Assembly: GCF_964188315.1 (NCBI RefSeq)
Contig: NC_135667.1
Coordinates: 5,828,001-5,892,000 of the forward strand
Direction of reading: 5' to 3'
DNA length: 64,000 nucleotides
DNA from: Podarcis muralis
Lineage: Eukaryota
Position numbers and translations under genes: made by a program. This document shows, piece by piece, positions 32,601-62,000 of this stretch (positions within the stretch are counted from its first letter, which is position 1; every line of letters begins with the position of its first letter). Under the pieces are notes generated by a model that was given only the letters and a program-made list of their open reading frames with translations, ran no database searches and was not told where the DNA came from.

Positions 32601-33300
32601 TTTAGATGTCTTCTAAAAGTCAGGCAGTTGTTTATTTCCTTGACATCTGGTGGGAGGGCGTTCCACAGGGCAGGTGCCACCACCAAGAAGGCCCTCTGCT
32701 TGGTTCCCTGTAACCTCACTTCTCGCAGGGAGGGAACCACCAGAAGGCCCTCAGAGCTGGACCTCAGTTTCTGGGCAGAATGATGGGGGTGGAGATGCTC
32801 CTTCAGGCCTACTGGGCCTTTGAGGCCATTTAAGGCTTTCAAGGTCAGCAACAACACTTTGAATTGTGCTTGGAAACATACCTGGAGCCAATGATCAAGC
32901 ACTAGGAAGTGGGAGAAAAATTTCCTTCTCTGAGCTCCGGCTATGTAGGGTTGTAGGCCAACAGTAGGACATATGCTCTGCATGTAGAAGGTCTGAGGAT
33001 CAATCCCACCGGCCTCTTCAGGTAAGGCTGTGAAGGACTTAGAAAGCTGCTGCCAACCAGTGTCCACAATACCAGATAAGGTACCCAGGGAGGTTATTTG
33101 CCAGGCCCCTCCTGCTTTCAGTGCTGACCAACGGCACCCTCACATTCCTTCTGTTCCCACAGGACTCAACCATCACCTACGCCACCATCAAATTCTGCTT
33201 TGCTAAGTCTTGCTTAGGAAATGGGCTCCGACTGGTGGAAGAGGAGAAGGTGATGTACAGCGAGGTTCTGTTTCCACCTAAGAACAGAGGAAGAAAGTGA
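26617..33300 (+). CDS. Ig-superfamily inhibitory receptor 'gene A' (LILR/CHIR/FCRL-like; 2 Ig, TM, 2 ITIM; 355 aa)
   Basis: Exons 26617-26641, 26742-26780, 29359-29655, 30922-31254, 32124-32228, 32328-32458, 33163-33300 (1068 nt, phases 1-1-1-1-1-0, open frame). Signal MKSAAFVTACLQILLVRSTHP, two C2-type Ig exons, TM LAFAYLAVPFVILMILLIFYC, tail with ITYATI and VMYSEV; AATAAA at 33595. Confidence 0.85.
26803..27852 (-). mobile_element. BovB LINE, 5'-truncated (intron 2 of gene A)
   Basis: ORF 26820-27572 MAESEEELKNLLMRVKEES...GVTKSRTRLND; (CAA)n tail. Confidence 0.92.
29769..30240. mobile_element. two abutting TA-flanked mariner-type MITEs (29769-30010, 30013-30240)
   Basis: TIRs cagtggcaccttggctctcgaac / gttcgagaaccaaggtaccactg, shared TA, then a cagtggtgcctcggg copy. 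Confidence 0.8.
30241..30599 (-). mobile_element. Sauria SINE, full length
   Basis: (ACCTTT)n tail to gcgtccc head. Confidence 0.88.
31431..31858 (-). mobile_element. BovB LINE 3' fragment
   Basis: IKKADRRRIDAFELWCWRRLLRVPW on minus strand. Confidence 0.88.
32366..32401 (+). repeat. coding (GAG)11GAA microsatellite = 12 Glu in gene A tail
   Basis: Direct count in exon 32328-32458. Confidence 0.9.
32596..32905 (-). mobile_element. L2 LINE 3' fragment
   Basis: FKVLLLTLKALNG...QRAFLVVAPALWNALP on minus strand. Confidence 0.85.
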
Positions 33301-33702: not shown

Positions 33703-34205
33703 TGACAACAAATCCAAAATGCAGCTGCCAGACTGGTGATTGGGAGTGGCCAACGGGACCATATAACACGAGTCCTGCATTGGCTCCCAGGACGTTTCTG
33801 GGCAGAATTCAAAGTGTTGGTGCTGACCTTTAAAGCCCTAAACGGCCTCAAAGGCCCAGTAGACCTGAAGGAGCGTCTCCACCCCCATCGCCCAGCCCAG
33901 ACACTGAGGTCCAGCTCCGAGGGCCTGCTGGCAGTTCCCTTTCTGCAAGAAGTGAGGTTACAGGGAACCAGGCAGAGGGCCTTCTCGGTGGTGGCACCTG
34001 CCCTGTGGAACGTTCTCTCATCAGATGTCAAGGAAATAAAGAACTATATTACTCTTAGACGACATCTGAAGGCAGCCCTGTATTGGGAAGTTTTTAATGT
34101 TTGATGTTTCATTGTGCTTTTATGGTTGTTGGAAGCCGTCCAGAGTGGCTGGGGCAAGCCAGTCAGATGGGCGGGGTACAAATAATAAAATTATTATTAT
34201 TATTA
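33703..34205 (+). mobile_element. L2 LINE 3' fragment with (TTA)n tail
   Basis: RDHITRVLHWLP..F.AEFKVL...ALWN.L. Confidence 0.85.
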
Positions 34206-43951: not shown

Positions 43952-44270
43952 GTTCTGCTCATGTTGTGAATGGGTTTCCGGAACGGATCCTGGTCGCAAC
44001 CAGAGGTACCACTGTGCCGTCATTAAAGAGATAAAAATCAACATTCAGAAATTATTCTTGGGACCTTTTTCAAATGACGTCACGCCTTCAGGACGAAAGA
44101 CCCAAGCGAAACACAACGAACAAATAACGGATTCCTCTTTATTCCTTTCAGGTCAGGGGCCACATTCATCGGCACCACCATCACCCACACCAAATCCATC
44201 CCTGTCACTGGGATATTTGCGCTTGGCTCCTACGCTCCTGATCCTGATGGTCCCACTCGCTTTCTGTTGA
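36380..44270 (+). CDS. Ig-superfamily activating-type receptor 'gene B' (2 Ig, TM with Arg, no cytoplasmic tail; 266 aa)
   Basis: Exons 36380-36404, 38610-38648, 39611-39907, 43030-43350, 44152-44270 (801 nt, all phase 1, open). Signal MKFAALITACLWILLWSSVHA; C-terminus PSLSLGYLRLAPTLLILMVPLAFC*. First donor (GTTTGG) is weak. Confidence 0.8.
36505..37225 (+). mobile_element. L2 3' fragment interrupted by a full-length Sauria SINE (36737-37088), ending in (ATC)n
   Basis: L2 sequence resumes after the SINE with taatgtt duplication. Confidence 0.8.
37629..38445 (+). mobile_element. Rex1/Babar-clade LINE fragment
   Basis: KFADDTTVVDLI...EV..L..WC..NNL.LN.KKTKE..VDFRK...AQQRLYFLR.L, then HCTVESVLTYG..VWFGSC in a second frame. 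Confidence 0.85.
38953..39457. mobile_element. pogo/Tigger-like non-autonomous DNA transposon
   Basis: TIRs ccgtatttttcgctctataag / ctatagagcgaaaagtacgg; related to 5430-5688 and 59438-59602. Confidence 0.8.
40010..40600 (-). mobile_element. L1 LINE 3' fragment
   Basis: FHHMWWKC..VKEFWEMIYSELKK (40503-40703) and ORF2 end on minus strand. Confidence 0.8.
40935..41530 (-). mobile_element. RTE-clade LINE 3' fragment
   Basis: Reverse-strand homologue of 17786-18325. Confidence 0.8.
41805..42290 (+). mobile_element. mariner transposase remnant (internally deleted)
   Basis: TVYEWFKRFREGR and PYSPNLAP.DFF.FPKLKS.LKG.RF...YFEG motifs with frameshifts. Confidence 0.75.
42321..42930 (+). mobile_element. 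L2 LINE 3' fragment with (TTA)n tail
   Basis: ORF 42292-42933 SRLDYCN.LYVGLP...DLHWLPVRFRAQFKVL. Confidence 0.9.
43600..43825. mobile_element. Tc1/mariner-superfamily MITE (cagtggtacc family)
   Basis: TIRs with TA TSD. Confidence 0.85.
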
Positions 44271-52400: not shown

Positions 52401-55400
52401 ATCATGTCTCCCTGGAGCCCAACAGTGAATGTCACAGGTGAGCCATGCCCTAATATTTTACAAACATTAATTCATTTCAATCCAAATGGGACCCCTGACC
52501 ATTAGGTCCAGTGGTGGCCGACTCTGGGCTTGCGGCGCTCATCTCGCTTTACTGGCCGAGGGAGCAGATTCCGGGTCGTGTGGCCAGCATAACTAAGCCG
52601 CTTCTGGTGAACCAGAGCAGTGCACGGAAACGCCGTTTACCTTCCCGCCAGAGCGGTACCTATTTATCTACTTGCACTGCCATGCTTTCGAACTGCTAGG
52701 TTGGCAGGATCAGGGACCGAGCAATGGGAGCTCACCCCATCACGGGGATTCAAACCGCTGACCTTCTGATCGGCATGCCCTAGGCTCTGTGGTTTAACCC
52801 ACAGCGCCACCCGCGTCCCTTGACATGAGTAGTACAGATCCCCAAAGGGGATTAAGAGTTTAGCCCGCTAACATTTACCTTCCCGGACACTGCACATTTC
52901 CCCTGAATGTTGCGCAACACATGCTGCTGATCTTCTCCTCTCCCCTCCTGAAGTCCAAGTGGGGAATTCATGAACCCACGACTCTCTGTTGACAACTGTG
53001 CCTGTATGAACCCGATTTAGTTATGGCTTGCCCCTTAAAACCTCCGTGAGCCACAGACTCCTAATCACTTAGCCATTGTACTCATTTTCCTTTACGGACG
53101 GCTCCTGTAGCTCCTCCTCCTGCCCCGGTGCTGACAGTGGATCCTCCGTCTGGAGTGGTGAATGAAGGGGGATTCCTGCGCCTCACTTGCTCGGCCTTTG
53201 GCAGCGACGCAGAGCAAAGGTTCCATTTCTACAAGGATGGGGTCAAGATTTCCTCCAGCAGTGAAGAGTCTCTGGCGGACTCCGGAGAACCCAGGAATGC
53301 CTTCTCAAACGCCTCTGCAAACATCCTGGTCCAAGTCACAGCCAGCATCCACACTGGGGGATTTGCTTGCAGGTATGAGCAGAAACTGAGCAGCCGATGG
53401 ATCATGTCTCCCTGGAGCCAAACGGTGAATGTCACAGGTGAGCCATGCCCCAATATTTTACAAATATTAATTCATAACAAACCAAATTACATACCCATAA
53501 TTAGAGATTTCTCCAAATTTCTGGATTTTCCATCTTCCCCTCCGTGGGTCCTATTGTACACCCTCTTAACTGCATATTTTTCCACAATCCGTATTTTATA
53601 TCTTCCCATCTTGTCCATAATATTAGTTACATTGCAAGTGTTATTAAAATCCTGCTAGGGTTTTCACCTGTTACAGTGATCACCTAGATAAATTATAAAT
53701 TTCCCCCTTTCTTTATTGAAGTTTAGTTCTCCTTGGTTCCTGAGTCTTCCAGTCAGTTTTGCCATTTCGGCATAGTCCAACAGTTTTATTTGCCTTTCTT
53801 CTCTGGTAGGGACACAATTTTCTTTCCATCTCTAGGCTAGCAGCATCCATGTGGCTGTTGTCGCATACATATAATGTCTTTTCTGTTCCTTTGGTATATC
53901 GGTATACCAATATACTGATATGTTTTTAACTTCACTGAATTACTGTTACTGCGTCTTCAACAACAACGGCTGCAATGGAGTCTCTCCTCCCTTTATTCGT
54001 GTTGTTGTTGTTGTTGTTGTTGAGTCGTTTTGTCGTGTTGGACTCTTCGTGACCCCCTGGACCAGAGCACACCAGGCCCTCCTGTCTTCCACTACCTCCC
54101 GCAGTTTGGTCAAACGCATGCTGGTAGCTCCGAGAACACTGTCCAACCATCTCGTCCTCTGCCGTCCCCTTCTCCTTGTGCCCTCCATCTTTCCCAACAT
54201 CAGGGTCTTTTCCAGGGAGTTTTCTCTTCCAATGAGGTGGCCAAAGTATTGGAGCCTCAGCTTCAGGATCTGTCCTTCCAGTGAGCACTCAGGGCTGATT
54301 TCCTTCAGAATGGATACATTTGATCTTCTTCCAGTCCATGGGACTCTCAAGAGTCTCCTCCAGCACCAGAATTCAAAAGCATCCATTCTTCGGCGATCAG
54401 CCTTCTTTATGGTCCAGCTCTCACTTCCATACATCACTACTGGGAAAACCATGGCTTTAACTATATGGATCTTTGTTGCCAAGGTGATGTCTCTGCTTTT
54501 TAAGATGCTGTCTACGTTTGTCACTGCTTTTCTCCCAAGGAGCAGGCGTCTTTTAATTTCGTGACTGCTGTCAGCATCTGCAGTGATCATGGAGCCCAAG
54601 AAAGTGAAATCTCTCACTGCCTCCATTTCTTCCCCTTATATTTGCCAGGACCCCTTATTCATACCAACAGCCAAATCCCCTTCTTTCCTTTCTGCAGTTT
54701 GGGCACCAAATTGCTCTTCGTCACCCCTGCTATATGCACGCTGGGCGATTCCACTGGTGATCCTGATGGTCCCTCTTGCTTTTTACTGCACGAGAAGAAA
54801 GAGAGGTAGGTGATGCTGGAGACTGTGGGCCTCTCATATCATTGGCCCAGTATACCTGAAGGAGCAACTCCACCTCCATCACTCAGCCCAGACACTGAGG
54901 TCCAGCTCCGAGGGCCTTCTGGTGGTTCACTCCCTGCGAGAAGCCAAGTTACAGGAAACCAGGCAGAGGGCCTTCTCGGTGGTGGCACCCACCCTCTGGA
55001 ACGTCCTCCCATCAGATGTCAAGGAAATAAACTACTATCTGAATTTTAGAAGGCATCTGAAGGCAGCCCTGTTTAGGGAAGTTTTTGATGTTTGATCATG
55101 TTTTTAATATTCTGTTGGAAGCCACCCAGAGTGGCTGGGTAACCCAAAAGGTGGGCAGGGTATACATAAATTATTATTATCATTATTATTATTACTACTA
55201 CTACTACTACTACTACCTATGTATGTAGAAGCCTGCTTAAGATCTTTAGGGGATAATGCTCCTCTCTGTGTCGTGAGAGTGGTGGCCGTGAGAGCAGTGT
55301 TGGTTAAAAGCAACAAAACCAAGCATTTGTTTTGTCTTCCTTCGTATTGGATGTGGTTAGGGTGTGGGAGGGAGCCTTGCCTGTGTCTGTCCTGTGGAAC

Positions 55401-56929
55401 TACCAGCCTCAAGAGGTTTGTTTTCAGGTCTCACCACCTTTCTTCTCTTTTCTCTTTTCATTTCCACTTTGGAAGCGTTGAAATCTGAGCAGGAAAACAA
55501 GGAAGAAGCAAATTCTGAGTATGTTGAAATGTTCAGCGCCACTAGGAAGCCTCAGAGGTAACGGCAACTAATGCTAGTATAACACTGATGTGATGTGTGT
55601 GTGTCTTCATAATTTCTTATTTATTTAAAGCATTTCTTCCAAAAAGTGGCTGACCAAAATAACAATGGTGGTGGCACAAAAGGAGGAAGGGAGGAGCGAA
55701 ATAGCCAGCTCAGGCAGCAGTTCAGTTCTTAAAGTTTTGAACATAGTTGGAGGCGAAGAGCACCCACAAACCATGCAAGGAGTTTCCAGAGGGGAGGAAA
55801 ACTTGAACCCAGAGCCTGGCAACCTGGAAATGCAGGAGAGACTTATCAGTCAAGAGAGGGACAACGTCCTGTTGGCTGGGAGATAAAAGGGTGAAAGGAG
55901 ACTGGAGGAACAGGCAGCGGGGGGTGTCCCAGGCTGAAAAAGGAGCCAGAGACCCCACAGGAAGAAGCATAGAATTGTAGAATTGGAAGGGACCCGGTGG
56001 ATCATCTAGTCCAGCCCCCTGCAATGCAGGAATATTCAGCTGCCCCTTACGGGGATCAAACCTGCAACCTTGGCATCATCAGCACCACGCTCTAGCCAAC
56101 TGAGCTATCCAGGAAGAAGGACCAAAAGGACAAGTTTGGGGGTTTCAGATAAGGAGGGGGAAATGATTGGCATGTTGGAGAGAAGGGAAGATGTCTGAAA
56201 GAGATGGGGTGGCTGGGACAGGGATAGAGCGATGGGGCAGGGAAAGGTGGAGGCAGAAGGGGAGAAGGGAGCAGATTCGTTGAGTTGCTTGACCACTCAC
56301 CTTTGCCAAGAGCTGCTGTGTGTATTCTCTGTGTAAAAAAACTGGGAGAGAAATTGTGGAACCATTTAAAAACGAACCTTTGATAATACATTAACTGGCT
56401 CCCTCCCCCACAATCTCTATTTAAGGAAATAGAAACTGAGCTATGGAATTGGCTGCTACAGGATGTGGTTTAGATGCCCTTTGAAAAGAGGTACATTTGT
56501 GAAGAATATTCTGCCAAAGCATTTTAGTCATGACAGCTAAATAGGTCTTCACTGTGCAGAAGCAGTCTACCTCTGAATTGCTGTGCACTGGAGATAAGGA
56601 AAAGAGGAGGGTGGCCTGTTTGTGAGTTGCCCAGGAGTGTCCAGCTGGCTGCTGTCAAAACTTGATGATGCGAACCTTCAATTTGCTCCCAACAGCCTTG
56701 GGGGGATCATCATTCTTTGAACATGTCCCTCAATTTCCTTCTCCTTTTCAGGACTCAGATGCCTTTTACTGCCTTGCCGCCCCCTGCTCTGCCTCAGCCC
56801 CCAATATCGCAATTATGGATGGAGAGCGGAGCCAAACTGGCCGAAGACCAGGAGGAAGGTCTCTACAACTACATTCCCCTTCAGGGCAAGAAGAGAGCAG
56901 ACCGATACAGAGATTCTGAAGAAGAATGA
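46418..56929 (+). CDS. Ig-superfamily receptor 'gene C' (5 Ig, TM Arg, YxxM / Pro-rich / YxxI tail; 678 aa if all exons are used)
   Basis: Exons 46418-46442, 46531-46569, 47103-47399, 49157-49483, 51110-51436, 52111-52437, 53111-53437, 54698-54805, 55476-55557, 56752-56929 (2037 nt, open). Signal MKSAALVTVCLQILIGRSVQA; TM LLYARWAIPLVILMVPLAFYC; last-exon choice less certain. Confidence 0.78.
46641..46946 (+). mobile_element. L2 LINE internal fragment
   Basis: GWMAANRLRLNPDKTEVLF...LGVILDSQLSMEAQVNSV. Confidence 0.85.
47716..48241 (+). mobile_element. Penelope-like element remnant (GIY-YIG end + pseudo-LTR)
   Basis: KPVGEHFNLPGHSIQDLKVAVL...GLNKDIGFLSHYT*; flanked by direct repeat tcaaacatgaat (47704-47715, 48242-48253). 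Confidence 0.85.
48150..48187 (+). ncRNA. minimal type-I hammerhead ribozyme motif of the Penelope pseudo-LTR
   Basis: GTAT-CTGAAGA-A-GTGTGCATGCACAC-GAAA-GC-TC-ATAC: conserved core, stem II GTGTG/CACAC, stem I GTAT/ATAC. Confidence 0.75.
48652..48738 (-). pseudogene. RNU6: U6 snRNA retrocopy (5'-truncated), duplicate of the U6/L1 chimera
   Basis: aaaatatggaacgcttcacaaatttgcgtgtcatccttgcacaggggccatgctaat = reverse complement of U6; local ~50-bp tandem duplication at 48594-48633. Confidence 0.88.
49952..50355 (-). pseudogene. RNU6: U6 snRNA / L1 3'-end chimeric retrocopy (U6 part 50248-50355)
   Basis: Full-length diverged U6 joined at its T-tract to an L1 ORF2 end (NKDWGEIVTSLTEHCKLLKTLPRLK*) and 3'UTR; 13-bp repeat caccctcatacca at 49939-49951 and 50356-50368; no upstream TATA/PSE. 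Confidence 0.82.
50764..50972 (+). mobile_element. tRNA-derived CORE/MIR-like SINE
   Basis: A-box gtgttgtaatggttaagagt, B-box ctgggttcgcgtc, actcacctcacagagtgtttgt core, (CTT)n tail. Confidence 0.7.
53470..53915 (-). mobile_element. L1 LINE 3' fragment
   Basis: Homologous to 40010-40600 on minus strand. Confidence 0.7.
53999..54650 (-). mobile_element. BovB LINE, 5'-truncated
   Basis: ORF 53946-54626 EAVRDFTFLGSMITAD...GVTKSPTRQND; (CAA)n tail. Confidence 0.92.
54832..55215 (+). mobile_element. L2 LINE 3' fragment
   Basis: gaggtccagctccgagggccttctgg...ccacccagagtggctgg with (TTA/CTA)n tail. Confidence 0.82.
55968..56110 (-). mobile_element. Squam3-like tRNA-derived SINE with CR1-type tail
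   Basis: Reverse complement GGATAGCTCAGTTGGCTAGAGCGTGG...GGTTTGATCCCC...ATTCTACAATTCTATG. Confidence 0.75.
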
Positions 56930-58179
56930 GCCATCGGGGAGATTAAAATATTCAGATGGGGATTTATGACCAGGGAGATGGGGTGGAAGGGGTCAGGGGA
57001 GAGGGCAGTGTTCTGCCTTCCCCTGCCTATTCCAGCAAACGGCTTGGCTCACTTTCTGCAGCTCTTTCCTCAAGAGTCTGTCTGTCTAAAATACTTTGCC
57101 CTGTTGCCCAAGGGTGCCTCTAAGCGGCAGGATTTGCCCAGTTAGCTGCTGTTCCTCTCCCTAGATCAGGGATGGGGAACTTGTGGCTCCCTCGATGATC
57201 TTGGGATCCAGCTCCCATCAGCCCCAGCCAACATGGTCTGTGCTCAAGGGATGGTGGGAATGGTTGATGCTGTTGTCTATGCTCTGGTATCCTCAAGGTT
57301 AGATTACTGCAATGCGTTATTTGTAGGGCTGCCTCTGAAGACGGTTTGGAAACTTCAGCTGGTGCAGAATTCAGCGGCCAGGTTGCTCACTGGAACAAGA
57401 GGGTTTGAACATATTGCATCAATCCTGGTCTGATTGCACCGGATTCCGATTACAGGGAATGACAAGACAAACTGTTAGAGTATATTGAACAGGCTAGATT
57501 AACAGAGGCAATTAGAGATCACCGTTTCGAAAAACATGGGGAAAATGCAGAGAATACTTCACAAAACAGTGCCCTAAAAGACATACCTGGACTTGTTTCA
57601 ATTAATGTCTGCAGGAGACTTTGTGGATATTTAAGTTACAATTAGAAAAATCTTAATAATTATTCATAAAGGAAACAGCTTATAAGAAGTAAATAAGGAG
57701 GCCAGATACAGGATAAAGGAAGTCTTTTATTTGTATTGTTGTATGTTATGCTTATTGTATGTTATGTTCATGTTTAATGAGGGTGGATTTCTGTATTGGG
57801 GGGCAGGGGGTTTATGTTATGTTGTAAATAAAATTTCCAATAAAAATTTAAAAAAAATAGAAAAAATAAAGCATGCCCAGCGCACATCACTTCTCCCAAA
57901 GTCCGTCAACATGGACAGATTCTCCCCTCGCTGTGTGTGAGGTTTGGTTTAAACTGGAGAGAACGGCAGGCCTTGAAGCTGTGTGGCTGTGCACTAAGAA
58001 AAAAAGCAGCACTTCCTCACTTGGTAGACCACACTGGCCACGTCCCCAGATTCCTCTCTTCTCAGAAGAACAAAACAAAACCACGGCTCCCTCCACAGCT
58101 CCCCTCTAGTAATATCAGACTGCTGCGCGCCCTGCCTCTTGCATCAACTTTCAAAGGAACAATTGGGGTTTTGCCCATT

Positions 58180-59085: not shown

Positions 59086-62000
59086 TCACACAGCACCTGC
59101 CCTTTCCACTTCTGGGCCATCTCTTTCCTGCACAGCCTCGTGGTGGCTTTGTTGAGGATGGAAGAGAAGATCGCTGTAGAGGACCTCTTCGTCTTTTGCC
59201 GAGATGGGATCGTTCTTCAGCGTTGGTTCAGAGGCAGTCACAGTCGGTGGGGAGGCAATGGTGGCATAGGTGACGTCTGAGCTCTGAGGATGGAGAGGGA
59301 AACGGAGGGTGACCCACGGTTCAAGCTGGAAAGCAGAAATGGCTCAGGAACAGTCCATTGAGAAGGAGGTTTCTTTCCCAGTGTACCCCCCAGGGCTCTC
59401 TGCAAAATATACTTCAAACGGGATGACCAGCAAAATACCGTATTTTTCAATCTATAAGACGCCCCCAGGTATAAGATGCCCCCTATTTTGGGGGACTCAA
59501 ATATAAGAAAATGGGGGGAGATGTATCCATGTATAAGACACCCCCTAATTTTTGACATTATTTTTAGGGGGGGACCTAGTGTTCTAACACGGAAAAATAT
59601 GGTAATTTCTGGCACACACATAAGAACTTAAGAATATACACCAGGGGTCAGCAACCTTTTCCAGCCGTGGGCCAGTCCACCATCCCTCAGACCTTGTGGG
59701 GGGTCCAGACTATATATTTTTTTTCGGGGGGGGATGAACAAATTCCTATGCCCCACAAATAACCCAGAGATGCATTTAAAATAAAAGGACACATTCTACT
59801 CATGTAAAAACATGCTGATTCCCGGACTGTCCACGGGCCGGATTGAGAAGGCGATTGGGCTGGATTCAGCCCCCAGGCCTTAGGTTGCCTATCCCTGATA
59901 TACACCTTTAGGCGCCAGGCAAAAACATTCCTCTTTAACCAGGTCTTTGGCCTATTGACACCCAATGCCCTTTTAAATGTGTTGTGGGAGGTGGGATTAC
60001 TGGTTTCTTATTTTTATCATGCATTTTTTTGTTATTTTATACTGTACAGTGGTACCTCGGGTTAAGTACTTAATTCATTCTGGAGGTCCGTTCTTAACCT
60101 GAATCTGTTCTTAACCTGAAGCACCACTTTAGCTAATGGGGCCTCCTGCTGCTGCCGTGCCACTGCTGAGCGATTTCTGTTCTCATCCTGAAGCAAAGTT
60201 CTTAACCTGAGGTACTATTTCTGAGTTTGCGGAGTCTGTAACCTGAAGCGTCTGTAACCTGAAGCGTCTGTGACCCGAGGTACCACTGTAATTTGATGTT
60301 GTGAACCGCCCTGCGATCTGTGGATGTAGGGCAGTATACAAATAATAATAGAATAATAGATTTGCAGGGCTAGGCTAGTGGCCCATCTAGTCCAACATCC
60401 TGTTCTCGCAGTAGCCAACCTGATGCCTGTGGGAAACCCAGGAGCAGCATCCGAGCACAAGAGCAAAACTCTCCCCTCCTGTAGCTTCTAGCAACTGGTG
60501 CTCAGAAGCTTTGCTGCCTCCAGCTGTGGAGGCAGACAATAGCCACTGTGGTGAGCGGCCGCAACGGATGTGGCTGAATCAGTTCGTAAGTTCTGTTTTC
60601 TGTTTCTGACCTTGGCCTGACATATGTACCTGGGAACCTCACAGCCTATCGGGTAATCATCCCTTTTTGTTTATCACCCGGAGTAGTTTGGAAAGGACGC
60701 AGTTGGTGCTGTGGTCTAAACCACTGAGCCTCTTGGGCTTGCCGGTCGGAATCTTGGGCTTGCCGATCGAATCCCCGCGACAGAGTGAACTCCCGTTGCT
60801 CTGTCCCTTCTCCTGCCAACCTAGCAGTTCGAAAGCACGCCATTGCAAGTAGATAAATAGGTACCGCTGTGGCGGGAAGGTAAACGGCATTTCCATGCGC
60901 TCTGGCACTTGTCACAGTGTTTCCATTGCACCAGAATCGGTTTAGTCCTGCTGGCCACATGACCCGGAAAGCTGTCTGTGAACAAACACCAGCTCCCTTG
61001 GCCTGAAAGCGAGATGAGCGCCGCAACCCCAGTCGCCTTTGACTGGACATAACCATCCAGGTGTCCTTTACCTTTTTTTTTTTTTTGCCTTACCTTAGTT
61101 TGTGGGGTGGGGGATAAGGGCTGTAGCTGAGTGGCAAGGTATCTGCACTGCATGCAACAGCTCCCAGGTTTGATCCCTGATGGTATCTTCAGGTAGACTC
61201 CAGTCTGAAACCCTCAAGAGCCACTACCAGTCAATGCAGATAATACTGAGCTAGGCTGGCCAATGACTTGGTATAAAGGAGCTTCTTGTGTTCCTTTGTC
61301 CATGGATGGCCAATTTAGCAGTTATAGACACAAGAGGTTCACGAGTTCTTTTTTTGGTTTTGGTTTCCATTCAAGTGGCCATCCCCACTCCTGGCTGTAG
61401 CTAATTCTCTAAGGACAGCTACACACTTGTTTACTTTCTCACCTGGACGGAAGACCAATCATTACAATTCCTAAGCTTCTTTGAAAGCGATCCTGACCCA
61501 TAAAACTGGTTTCAGTAAGAGGATGGACTCATTTCCCGAGCTCAGATGGAAGCAAAATGCAAACCTAAACCTTTCTACTTACTTTGACCTGAAAGTCTGT
61601 CTTTTGGGGTACCAACAACCCAAACATGTCTTGACTTGTTTCCTCCTTGCTTTCCTTTGTCTCAGATGCTAGCTGATATTTTGATGTGCCCAAGGCAAAA
61701 AGAACTAGAGAGAGAGAGAAAGGGAGTGAAAAGTTAAAAGTATGGTTATGCACCATCCTTATCTCTGATCTGTGAGAGACTCCACAAATTCCTGCACTGA
61801 TCCAGGACTCTGTTTCCTTGGAATGAAGGTCAGCAGAGACTGTGGTGTCTCTAGGGTATATGGTTTTATTTACACACATAAACAACCAGAGCATAGGATG
61901 GAAGGTATCATAGTACTGACATCTCCATAGATCTTGCTTCCCCTTTAGCTTTCCAGGACAGCCCCCAAACCCAGAGCAAACATGTCTCTCTCTTAGAGAT

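What the first reader, a model, noticed from the sequence alone, without database searches (positions are those of the whole stretch)
55476..56929. Gene C tail appears to have erased its ITIMs through a compensated frameshift
The terminal exon (56752) is homologous to the ITIM exons of A (GAC TCA ACC ATC ACC TAC) and D (AGC TCA GAC GTC ACC TAT) when read in phase 0 (GAC TCA GAT GCC TTT TAC). However, the distal Tyr segment homologous to D's EEVLYSD (here EEGLYNY) lies in another frame. The upstream exon ends in phase 2 (AG/GTAACG), which selects that other frame. The proximal ITIM region therefore becomes Pro-rich TQMPFTALPPPALPQPP, and the distal Tyr survives as DQEEGLYNYI, with Gly at Y-2 breaking the ITIM consensus and acidic residues resembling hemITAM/ITAM halves. 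Inference: an inhibitory-to-activating conversion, as described for KIR, by an unusual mechanism.
Basis: partly seen in the sequence, partly recalled or inferred. Interest (0 to 1): 0.75.

Follow-up and report, generated by a model that had tools for sequence, protein, structure and literature searches.

The report
Frame-shifted ITIM tail, ancient in lizards
The last exon of this lizard immune-receptor gene descends from an inhibitory (ITIM) tail exon but is entered in another reading frame, which destroys the first inhibitory motif; the change is an old, conserved tail type shared by lacertid and iguanian lizards, not a recent accident of this gene.

Summary
Gene C's transmembrane (TM) exon (54698-54805) ends in phase 1. 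The 82-nt exon 55476-55557 is open in one frame only and ends in phase 2 (AG|GTAACG). The last exon (56752-56929) is therefore read one base off the frame used by the ITIM exons of paralogues A and D.

Annotated proteins of P. muralis, P. lilfordi, Lacerta, Zootoca, Anolis and Sceloporus carry this same tail. One spliced contig of a related species joins 55557|56752.

The first 12 codons resemble ITIM tails only in phase 0 (p=0.0004). After nt 36, only the used frame resembles them (z 3-8). A DNA alignment places a net +1 insertion at exon nt 52-55 (about 56803-56806) in all four C-type exons compared. The compensated frameshift is therefore real, but it predates the lacertid/iguanian split.

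"Inhibitory-to-activating conversion" is not shown. There is no ITAM, and the TM Arg is not conserved. These point to PI3K/Grb2/SH3-type adaptor signalling, by inference only.

Verdict: a new variant of a known kind, of moderate interest.

The parts
54698..54805 (+). Transmembrane exon of gene C. It ends in phase 1 (AGA G|GT). It carries Arg codon CGC at 54739-54741, near the outer end of the membrane span.
   Evidence: tblastn of P0057/P0036/P0044 maps here at 83-95% identity.
55476..55557 (+). Penultimate cytoplasmic exon, 82 nt. Only one frame is open. It ends in phase 2 (CAG AG|GTAACG).
   Evidence: It is 93-100% identical to the same exon of the annotated proteins P0057, P0036 and P0044. 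The same phase-2 donor is seen in P. muralis, Lacerta, Anolis and Sceloporus.
55520..55531 (+). YVEM, a YxxM motif. It is conserved as YVEM or YLEM in all C-type tails.
   Evidence: It aligns with DLET in A and with (D)MFG in D, so it was gained by point changes.
55558..56751 (+). Last intron (GT..AG, 1194 nt). It holds interspersed repeats and no further exon in any annotated model.
   Evidence: a contig of run X1 joins 55557|56752; the annotated models splice directly.
56752..56929 (+). Terminal coding exon, read in the +1 frame relative to the ITIM exons. Stop TGA at 56927-56929.
56752..56802 (+). Segment derived from proximal-ITIM coding sequence and now read out of the ancestral frame. 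It gives the Pro-rich stretch. The relic Tyr codon, TAC in phase 0, is at 56767-56769.
   Evidence: phase 0 p=0.0004; used frame not significant. (same offset as the ITIM exons up to exon nt 51).
56803..56806 (+). Best estimate of the frame-restoring insertion (AATA). It is 4 nt in lacertids and a net +1 in all four C-type exons compared.
   Evidence: MAFFT alignment A2, columns 75-78, with frame bookkeeping. The exact placement is approximate.
56852..56878 (+). Distal Tyr motif EEGLYNYIP, in the ancestral frame. Tyr is at 56864-56866. Position 56870 is T here and A in three other lacertids (LYNNI).
33163..33300 (+). Last exon of paralogue A, with two ITIMs (ITYATI, VMYSEV) in phase 0.
59086..59283 (-). 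Last exon of paralogue D, with two ITIMs (VTYATI, VLYSDL) in phase 0.
   Evidence: The annotated P. muralis protein P0013 reads ...QVK|SSDVTY.

Best explanation
Gene C is a multi-Ig, single-pass receptor of the FcR-like / LRC-like family, in a Podarcis genome. Its cytoplasmic tail belongs to an old squamate tail class that was made from a two-ITIM tail by two compensating changes.

1. The penultimate exon came to end in phase 2 instead of phase 0.
2. A net +1 insertion arose about 52-55 nt into the last exon.

As a result, roughly the first 17 codons of the last exon are read one base off their ancestral frame. Those codons once encoded the proximal ITIM. They now give a Pro-rich, PxxP-type stretch. 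From the M-E-x-G block onward the ancestral frame is kept, including the distal Tyr. That distal motif has Gly or Asp at Y-2 and Asn at Y+2 (LYxNIP), so it is not an ITIM. A YxxM motif was gained in the penultimate exon.

Shown here: the exon structure, the phases, the homology in two frames, the rough position of the indel, and conservation across Lacertidae and Iguania.

Inferred here: the tail no longer recruits SHP-1/2 through ITIMs. Once phosphorylated, it instead docks PI3K p85 (YxxM), Grb2-type SH2 adaptors (YxN) and SH3 proteins (Pro-rich stretch). That would make it a co-stimulatory or adaptor type of tail rather than an ITAM-type activator.
For: Structure:
- The phase chain in the window is 1 -> 2 -> +1 frame.
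- Annotated proteins have the identical junction (...KPQ-R-TQT...) in P. muralis P0057, Zootoca P0055, Lacerta P0036 and P. lilfordi P0044. The same tail type occurs in Anolis P0071 and Sceloporus P0061.
- These proteins map back to DNA with phase-2 donors.
- One contig of run X1 (related species) joins 55557|56752 at GT..AG.

Homology in two frames:
- The first 12 codons match 5 ITIM tails in phase 0 only. The score is 84 against a null of -44 +/- 30 (p=0.0004). For Lacerta p=0.001 and for Anolis p=0.03.
- After nt 36 only the used frame matches, with z = 3.5, 7.8, 3.2 and 2.9.
- The acceptor region and the first ~51 nt align at the same offset. All four C-type exons become +1 mod 3 at alignment columns 75-78.

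Distribution and motifs:
- ITIM-type tails are widespread in the turtles and squamates of the hit list. C-type tails were seen only in squamates.
- YxEM and LYxNI are conserved.
- Within the shifted segment, the lacertid changes are 3 synonymous to 1 non-synonymous in the used frame.
Against: - Expression in the window's own species is not shown. Two bulk RNA runs and one single-cell RNA run gave no reads on the exons.
- The spliced contig is single, of depth 3.6, from a run whose RNA status is a guess.
- Outside the motifs the tail evolves almost neutrally. Lacertid changes are 6 synonymous to 10 non-synonymous in the used frame and 9:7 in phase 0. Anolis and Sceloporus differ evenly over the three codon positions.
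- Phase 0 is open in every species.
- The position of the indel rests on an alignment of 40-60% identity. A frameshift-aware protein/DNA alignment put the switch at nt 31-38 for some pairs.
- A turtle protein (P0078) ends in MYVNIPF, so YxNIP may be older than, and independent of, the distal ITIM.
- In this genome Asn at Y+2 is replaced by Tyr, which breaks the YxN consensus.
- No binding or signalling data exist.
Confidence: 0.65

Rival explanations
1. The tail still acts as a brake, but by a non-ITIM route. For example, Grb2 docked on the distal phosphotyrosine could bring in SHIP-1 or Csk, as reported for mouse FCRL1. The frame change would then alter the wiring but not the sign of the signal.
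For: LYxNIP fits a Grb2-type site. In mouse FCRL1, pY281-dependent GRB2 recruitment brings SHIP-1 and SOS1 and lowers ERK phosphorylation (PMC10562807). The TM Arg is not conserved, so no adaptor pairing is implied.
Against: No ITIM or ITSM is left. YxxM and the Pro-rich stretch are typical of positive co-receptors (own knowledge). There are no data either way.
Confidence: 0.25
2. There was no ancestral frameshift. The C-type last exon is an unrelated tail exon, and the phase-0 resemblance to ITIM exons comes from chance or from shared splice-site constraints.
For: blastn finds no paralogue hit for the tail exons inside the window. Identity in the pre-shift block is only 40-57%.
Against: The anchored test gives p=0.0004, and the signal is repeated in Lacerta and Anolis. 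The polypyrimidine and acceptor region is also alike. The same-offset identity of 10-12/18 falls to 0-4/18 at +/-1. Similarity in the used frame after nt 36 gives z up to 7.8.
Confidence: 0.07
3. Phase 0 of the last exon is also translated, in an alternative isoform, giving a tail that starts DSDAFY. The exon would then be dual-coding.
For: Phase 0 is open over ~55 codons in the window, P. raffonei, P. muralis, Lacerta, Anolis and Sceloporus. Lacertid changes are 9 synonymous to 7 non-synonymous in phase 0.
Against: The upstream exon is open in one frame only and ends in phase 2 in all five species checked. Lacerta has His in place of the phase-0 Tyr. In the window all three frames are open, so openness says little. 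No annotated isoform uses phase 0.
Confidence: 0.04
4. The tail is a recent degenerative change, and gene C is on its way to becoming a pseudogene.
For: There are no RNA reads in three runs of the same species. The linker evolves almost neutrally. The conserved Asn is replaced by Tyr in this genome.
Against: The same tail, with the same junction and motifs, is kept in six or more species of two squamate clades. All frames and splice sites of the tail exons are intact.
Confidence: 0.03

Closest known systems
Activating KIR and Ly49 formed from inhibitory homologues (Abi-Rached and Parham 2005, PMC2213150)
   Same: A paired-receptor family in which a member loses ITIM signalling through a small change in the signalling module, while keeping related ectodomains.
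   Different: In KIR the proximal ITIM is cut by a stop codon and a TM Lys is gained. Those activating forms are also young and recurrent. Here the ITIM coding sequence is kept but read in another frame, through an intron-phase change plus a compensating insertion. The tail stays long, and the form is old and stable.
Bifunctional chicken Ig-like receptors (CHIR-AB; PMC6760009, PMC3601082)
   Same: Ig receptors that combine a charged TM residue with a long tail. The window's gene C has both a TM Arg and a long tail.
   Different: The Arg of gene C is not conserved in other lacertids or in iguanians. Its tail has no ITIM. Relatedness to CHIR was not tested.
FCRL1 (ITAM-like tail that binds GRB2; PMC10562807)
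   Same: An FcR-like receptor without a canonical ITIM or ITAM, whose tail tyrosine recruits GRB2. Several relatives of gene C are auto-named Fc receptor-like.
   Different: Orthology is not shown. The motifs differ. In this genome the Asn needed for a YxN site is replaced.
YxxM co-receptors such as CD28, ICOS, CD19 and DAP10 (own knowledge, not tested here)
   Same: A tail with a YxxM site of the kind bound by the SH2 domains of PI3K p85; CD28 also has Pro-rich motifs.
   Different: There is no sequence relationship. This is a resemblance of short motifs only.

Membership tests
ITIM-bearing inhibitory receptor | (I/V/L/S)-x-Y-x-x-(L/V/I) in the cytoplasmic tail | tested here: not met
   The tail tyrosines of gene C are SEYVEM (Met at +3), GLYNYI (Gly at -2), YNYIPL (Tyr at -2) and DRYRDS. 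None fits. Paralogues A and D fit twice each.
ITAM-bearing activating receptor | Two YxxL/I motifs 6-12 residues apart | tested here: not met
   YVEM lies about 45 residues before the distal Tyr. No second YxxL/I follows at ITAM spacing.
hemITAM | Acidic triplet, then Gly directly before YxxL (DEDG-YxxL; pattern from own knowledge) | tested here: not met
   The sequence is QEEG-L-YNYI. It has an extra Leu between Gly and Tyr, and Ile at +3. This is a resemblance only.
Adaptor-paired activating receptor (FcR gamma / DAP12 type) | A conserved basic residue inside the TM helix | tested here: inconclusive
   Arg is present at 54739-54741 in the window and in P. lilfordi P0044. It is Cys in P. muralis, Lacerta and Zootoca, and Trp or other residues in Anolis and Sceloporus.
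PI3K-recruiting co-receptor tail | YxxM motif | tested here: met
   YVEM at 55520-55531. YVEM or YLEM is present in all C-type tails seen, including Rhineura. Binding was not tested.
Grb2-recruiting tail | Y-x-N motif | tested here: not met
   The window has YNY. The other lacertids have YNN, and Anolis and Sceloporus have YKN. The feature is met in the relatives but not in this genome.
Squamate C-type tail class (defined here) | Phase-2 entry into the ITIM-derived last exon, plus a net +1 shift near exon nt 52-55, plus YxxM and LYxNIP-like motifs | tested here: met
   The motif is slightly altered (LYNYI) in the window.

The most novel reading that the evidence does not exclude
A tail-making event more than 150 million years old, in which the coding sequence of an ITIM was kept but re-read in another frame as an SH3-binding Pro-rich segment. 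This 'overprinting' inside a signalling tail would have created a distinct, conserved class of non-inhibitory (co-stimulatory) Ig receptors in squamates, and that module has since been shuffled onto different ectodomains.
Probability: 0.35. Interest if true: 0.6.

Novelty: new variant of a known kind. Interest (0 to 1): 0.45.

Why it matters
Paired immune receptors are known to switch sign by stop codons and by TM charge changes. Here the switch uses a different route: an intron-phase change with a compensating insertion. This route keeps a long tail, deletes only the proximal ITIM, and turns its codons into a Pro-rich stretch. The form is conserved across lacertid and iguanian lizards, so it is a stable functional class rather than a decaying copy. 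It offers a concrete, testable set of motifs (YxxM, PxxP, LYxNIP) for reptile leukocyte signalling, a field with almost no functional data. It also flags mis-joined gene models in the public annotations of this locus.

Tried and rejected
- blastn of the TM, penultimate and last exons against the rest of the window found no paralogue at E<1e-3. The homology only shows in anchored or profile-like tests.
- The word search with the 58-aa last-exon peptide found nothing. Its length window excludes full-length proteins.
- The exhaustive representative search with the stored tail P0057:281-366 returned four proteins: P0057 itself, the chimeric model P0013, and two Pro-rich proteins that I take to be spurious. 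It gives no information on distribution.
- Pfam finds no family for the tail.
- The P. raffonei locus L002 holds the last exon at 95% identity, but not gene C's TM or penultimate exon. There the last exon is attached to a different stalk and TM in protein P0067.
- I first misread D's donor as AAAG|GTAAGT (phase 1). It is AAA|GTAAGT (phase 0), as in P0013.
- I first placed a 1-nt insertion directly after the relic TAC. I dropped this because the block TGCTCTGC further on still aligns in phase 0 with the Lacerta A-like exon.
- The three T>C differences of run X1 are all synonymous in phase 0, which looked like selection on phase 0. With four lacertid sequences the pattern is not significant.
- The Rhineura model keeps the YVEM exon, whose sequence runs on into AG|GTAA as in the phase-2 donors, but it uses another short last exon. 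No LYxNIP motif lies within 3 kb downstream. This is inconclusive.
- The RNA runs of the window's species covered only repeats.

Full report
**Setting.** The window has no N. It carries a histone cluster at about 8.5-21 kb. This is followed by tandem genes for Ig-domain receptors (Pfam Ig_2, Ig_3 and ig on the exons). The closest proteins are from Podarcis: 93-96% identity for the repeated Ig exon. More distant hits carry automatic names such as Fc receptor-like 5, alpha-1B-glycoprotein-like, IGSF1-like and OSCAR. I therefore call the family FcR-like / LRC-like and do not assign it further.

**The four genes.**
- Gene A: plus strand, last exon 33163-33300.
- Gene B: plus strand, TM exon near 44.2 kb.
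- Gene C: plus strand, 47-57 kb, with one Ig exon plus four near-identical Ig exons.
- Gene D: minus strand, last exon 59283-59086.

**The observation.**
- C's TM exon (54698-54805) ends AGA G|GT, which is phase 1.
- The next exon starts at 55476, after a good polypyrimidine tract and AG. Two of its frames hit a stop within 9 nt. The third frame is the one handed on by the TM exon. The exon is 82 nt and ends CAG AG|GTAACG, which is phase 2.
- The last exon starts at 56752. In the selected frame it is open to the TGA at 56927-56929 and reads a Pro-rich stretch, a linker and EEGLYNYIP. In phase 0 it begins DSDAFY.
- A and D have ITYATI/VMYSEV and VTYATI/VLYSDL in phase 0. Their upstream exons end in phase 0. 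The P. muralis protein P0013 confirms the D junction.

**Is the junction used?** Annotated proteins of P. muralis (P0057), Zootoca (P0055), Lacerta agilis (P0036) and P. lilfordi (P0044) contain exactly TM - penultimate exon - last exon in this frame. Mapped back on their genomes, P0057 and P0036 show the same AG|GTAA donor and the same acceptor.

Reads gave the following. Two bulk RNA runs and one single-cell run of the window's species gave no reads on the exons, only on repeats, so expression in this species is not shown. In run X1 (a related species; contigs; RNA status only guessed) one contig joins 55557|56752 at GT..AG (depth 3.6, 27 letters on the shorter side). The same run also covers the intron at depth 6-10.

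**How old is it?** Anolis (P0071) and Sceloporus (P0061) have the same kind of tail: YVEM, a linker with a small Pro-containing block, M/V-E-x-G, and EE(D/G)LYKNIP. On their DNA the penultimate exon also ends in phase 2 (TAC AG|GTAAAG and GAC AG|GTAAAG), and the last exon starts one base before the coding frame. Podarcis is in Laterata and Sceloporus in Toxicofera, and both clades lie within Episquamata. The arrangement therefore predates that split. From my own knowledge this is well over 100 million years ago. It is not a recent erosion of one gene.

**Is the last exon really a frame-shifted ITIM exon?**
1. The intron end and acceptor are alike in both exon types, and the exon starts align at the same offset. 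Identity of the first 18 nt is 10-12/18 at offset 0 and 0-4/18 at offsets of +/-1, for all four C-type exons against A and D.
2. Translated in phase 0, the first 12 codons of C score 84 against five ITIM tails (window A and D, Anolis, Hemicordylus, Notechis), with a shuffle null of -44 +/- 30 (p=0.0004). For Lacerta p=0.001 and for Anolis p=0.03. The used frame scores -60.
3. From nt 36 on, only the used frame is similar to the ITIM tails (z = 3.5, 7.8, 3.2 and 2.9). The other two frames are at null.
4. In a MAFFT alignment of three ITIM-type and four C-type exons, exon positions agree modulo 3 up to column 74 (exon nt 51). All four C-type exons are +1 from column 79 on. The insertion is AATA at about 56803-56806 in lacertids. 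The M-E-N block just behind it is in frame in both exon types.
5. A frameshift-aware protein/DNA alignment also switches from phase 0 to +1, at nt 31-38 for some pairs. The site is therefore bracketed between about nt 30 and nt 60.

On the upstream side, the alignment of the penultimate exons suggests a 1-nt gap behind YVEM and a donor 6 nt further up than in D. This part is of low confidence.

ITIM-type tails are common in the turtles and squamates of the hit list, while C-type tails were seen only in squamates. This favours the polarity ITIM to C-type.

**Constraint.**
- Among four lacertid exons, the shifted segment has 3 synonymous and 1 non-synonymous change in the used frame.
- The whole exon has 6:10 in the used frame and 9:7 in phase 0.
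- Anolis and Sceloporus differ evenly over the codon positions (13, 14 and 17 of 54), except in blocks such as the one coding EE-x-LYKNIP, which is almost identical at the DNA level.
- The tail is thus a fast linker with short conserved motifs. Phase 0 is open in all species, but in the window all three frames are open, so openness carries little weight.

**What it does (inference).**
- No tyrosine of C fits an ITIM, an ITSM or an ITAM.
- The conserved motifs are YxxM in the penultimate exon, the Pro-rich stretch, and LYxNIP. By established SH2 specificities (own knowledge), pYxxM binds PI3K p85 and pYxN binds Grb2. FCRL1 is a precedent for a GRB2-binding FcR-like tail (PMC10562807).
- I therefore expect an adaptor or co-stimulatory type of tail, not an ITAM-like activator. 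A negative role through Grb2-SHIP-1 cannot be excluded.
- The TM Arg (54739-54741) occurs only here and in P. lilfordi, so adaptor pairing is not a family feature.
- In this genome, Asn at Y+2 is replaced by Tyr (A to T at 56870). This breaks YxN and creates YIPL.

**Comparison with what is known.** Activating KIR and Ly49 arose from inhibitory forms by a TM Lys and a stop codon in the proximal ITIM (PMC2213150). CHIR-AB combine a TM charge with a long tail (PMC6760009 and PMC3601082). The present case shares the theme but differs in mechanism (phase change plus compensating insertion, with a long tail kept) and in age. My literature searches found no description of this tail in squamates. That is not proof of absence.

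**Limits and procedure.**
- I did not search a joined (spliced) model of the window's gene. Its exons were searched one by one by reference. For the joined tail I used part of a stored annotated protein (P0057:281-366).
- The word search on the tail and the exhaustive representative search were uninformative.

Noticed in passing
window 54739-54741; gene B TM exon near 44220: The TM exon of gene C has an Arg (YARWAIP) at the same place as the Arg of gene B (YLRLAP). P. lilfordi shares it. P. muralis, Lacerta and Zootoca have Cys (YACLAIP). This could be a recent Cys-to-Arg change, or an exchange between B and C.
   Followed up: partly
window 56870: The conserved LYNNI is LYNYI in this genome (A to T). 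This removes the Asn of the YxN site and creates a second Tyr (YIPL). Whether it is fixed or an allele is unknown.
   Followed up: partly
L002:8089-8266 (P. raffonei); window 47-54 kb: The same last exon (95% identity) is joined in P. raffonei to a different mucin-like stalk and TM (P0067, 524 aa). The Ig exons of the window's gene C are only about 50% identical to those of P0057, although the TM and tail exons are 83-100% identical. The signalling module therefore seems to be shuffled between ectodomains.
   Followed up: partly
P0036 (Lacerta, L004), P0013 (P. muralis): The public gene models at this locus are chimeric. P0036 fuses an A-like gene (through a donor inside its distal ITIM) to a C-like gene. 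P0013 carries the C-type last exon at its N-terminus, in front of a D-type gene.
   Followed up: no
L005:10860-11052 (Anolis); window 8.5-21 kb: A histone gene lies 1.8 kb downstream of the Anolis C-type gene, and a histone cluster flanks the receptor genes in the window. The linkage to histone genes therefore seems to be conserved.
   Followed up: no
L004, about 33900-33948 (Lacerta agilis): A 10-nt deletion near the end of the last exon changes the C-terminus behind KKRAE and moves the stop.
   Followed up: no
P0078 (Chrysemys picta): A turtle receptor with an otherwise different tail ends in MYVNIPF, close to the LYKNIPF of Sceloporus. The YxNIP motif may be older than the squamate C-type tail.
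   Followed up: no
window 57157-57810: RNA reads of the window's species pile up here, mostly with the first mate on the minus strand, at 90-95% likeness and with fixed differences. They probably come from repeat copies elsewhere rather than from the 3' UTR of gene C. AATAAA signals lie at 57827, 57839 and 57865.
   Followed up: no
window 56760, 56814, 56838 (run X1): All three differences shown for the related species in the last exon are T>C at third positions of phase 0. With four lacertid sequences the excess is not significant, but it stays slightly odd.
   Followed up: yes
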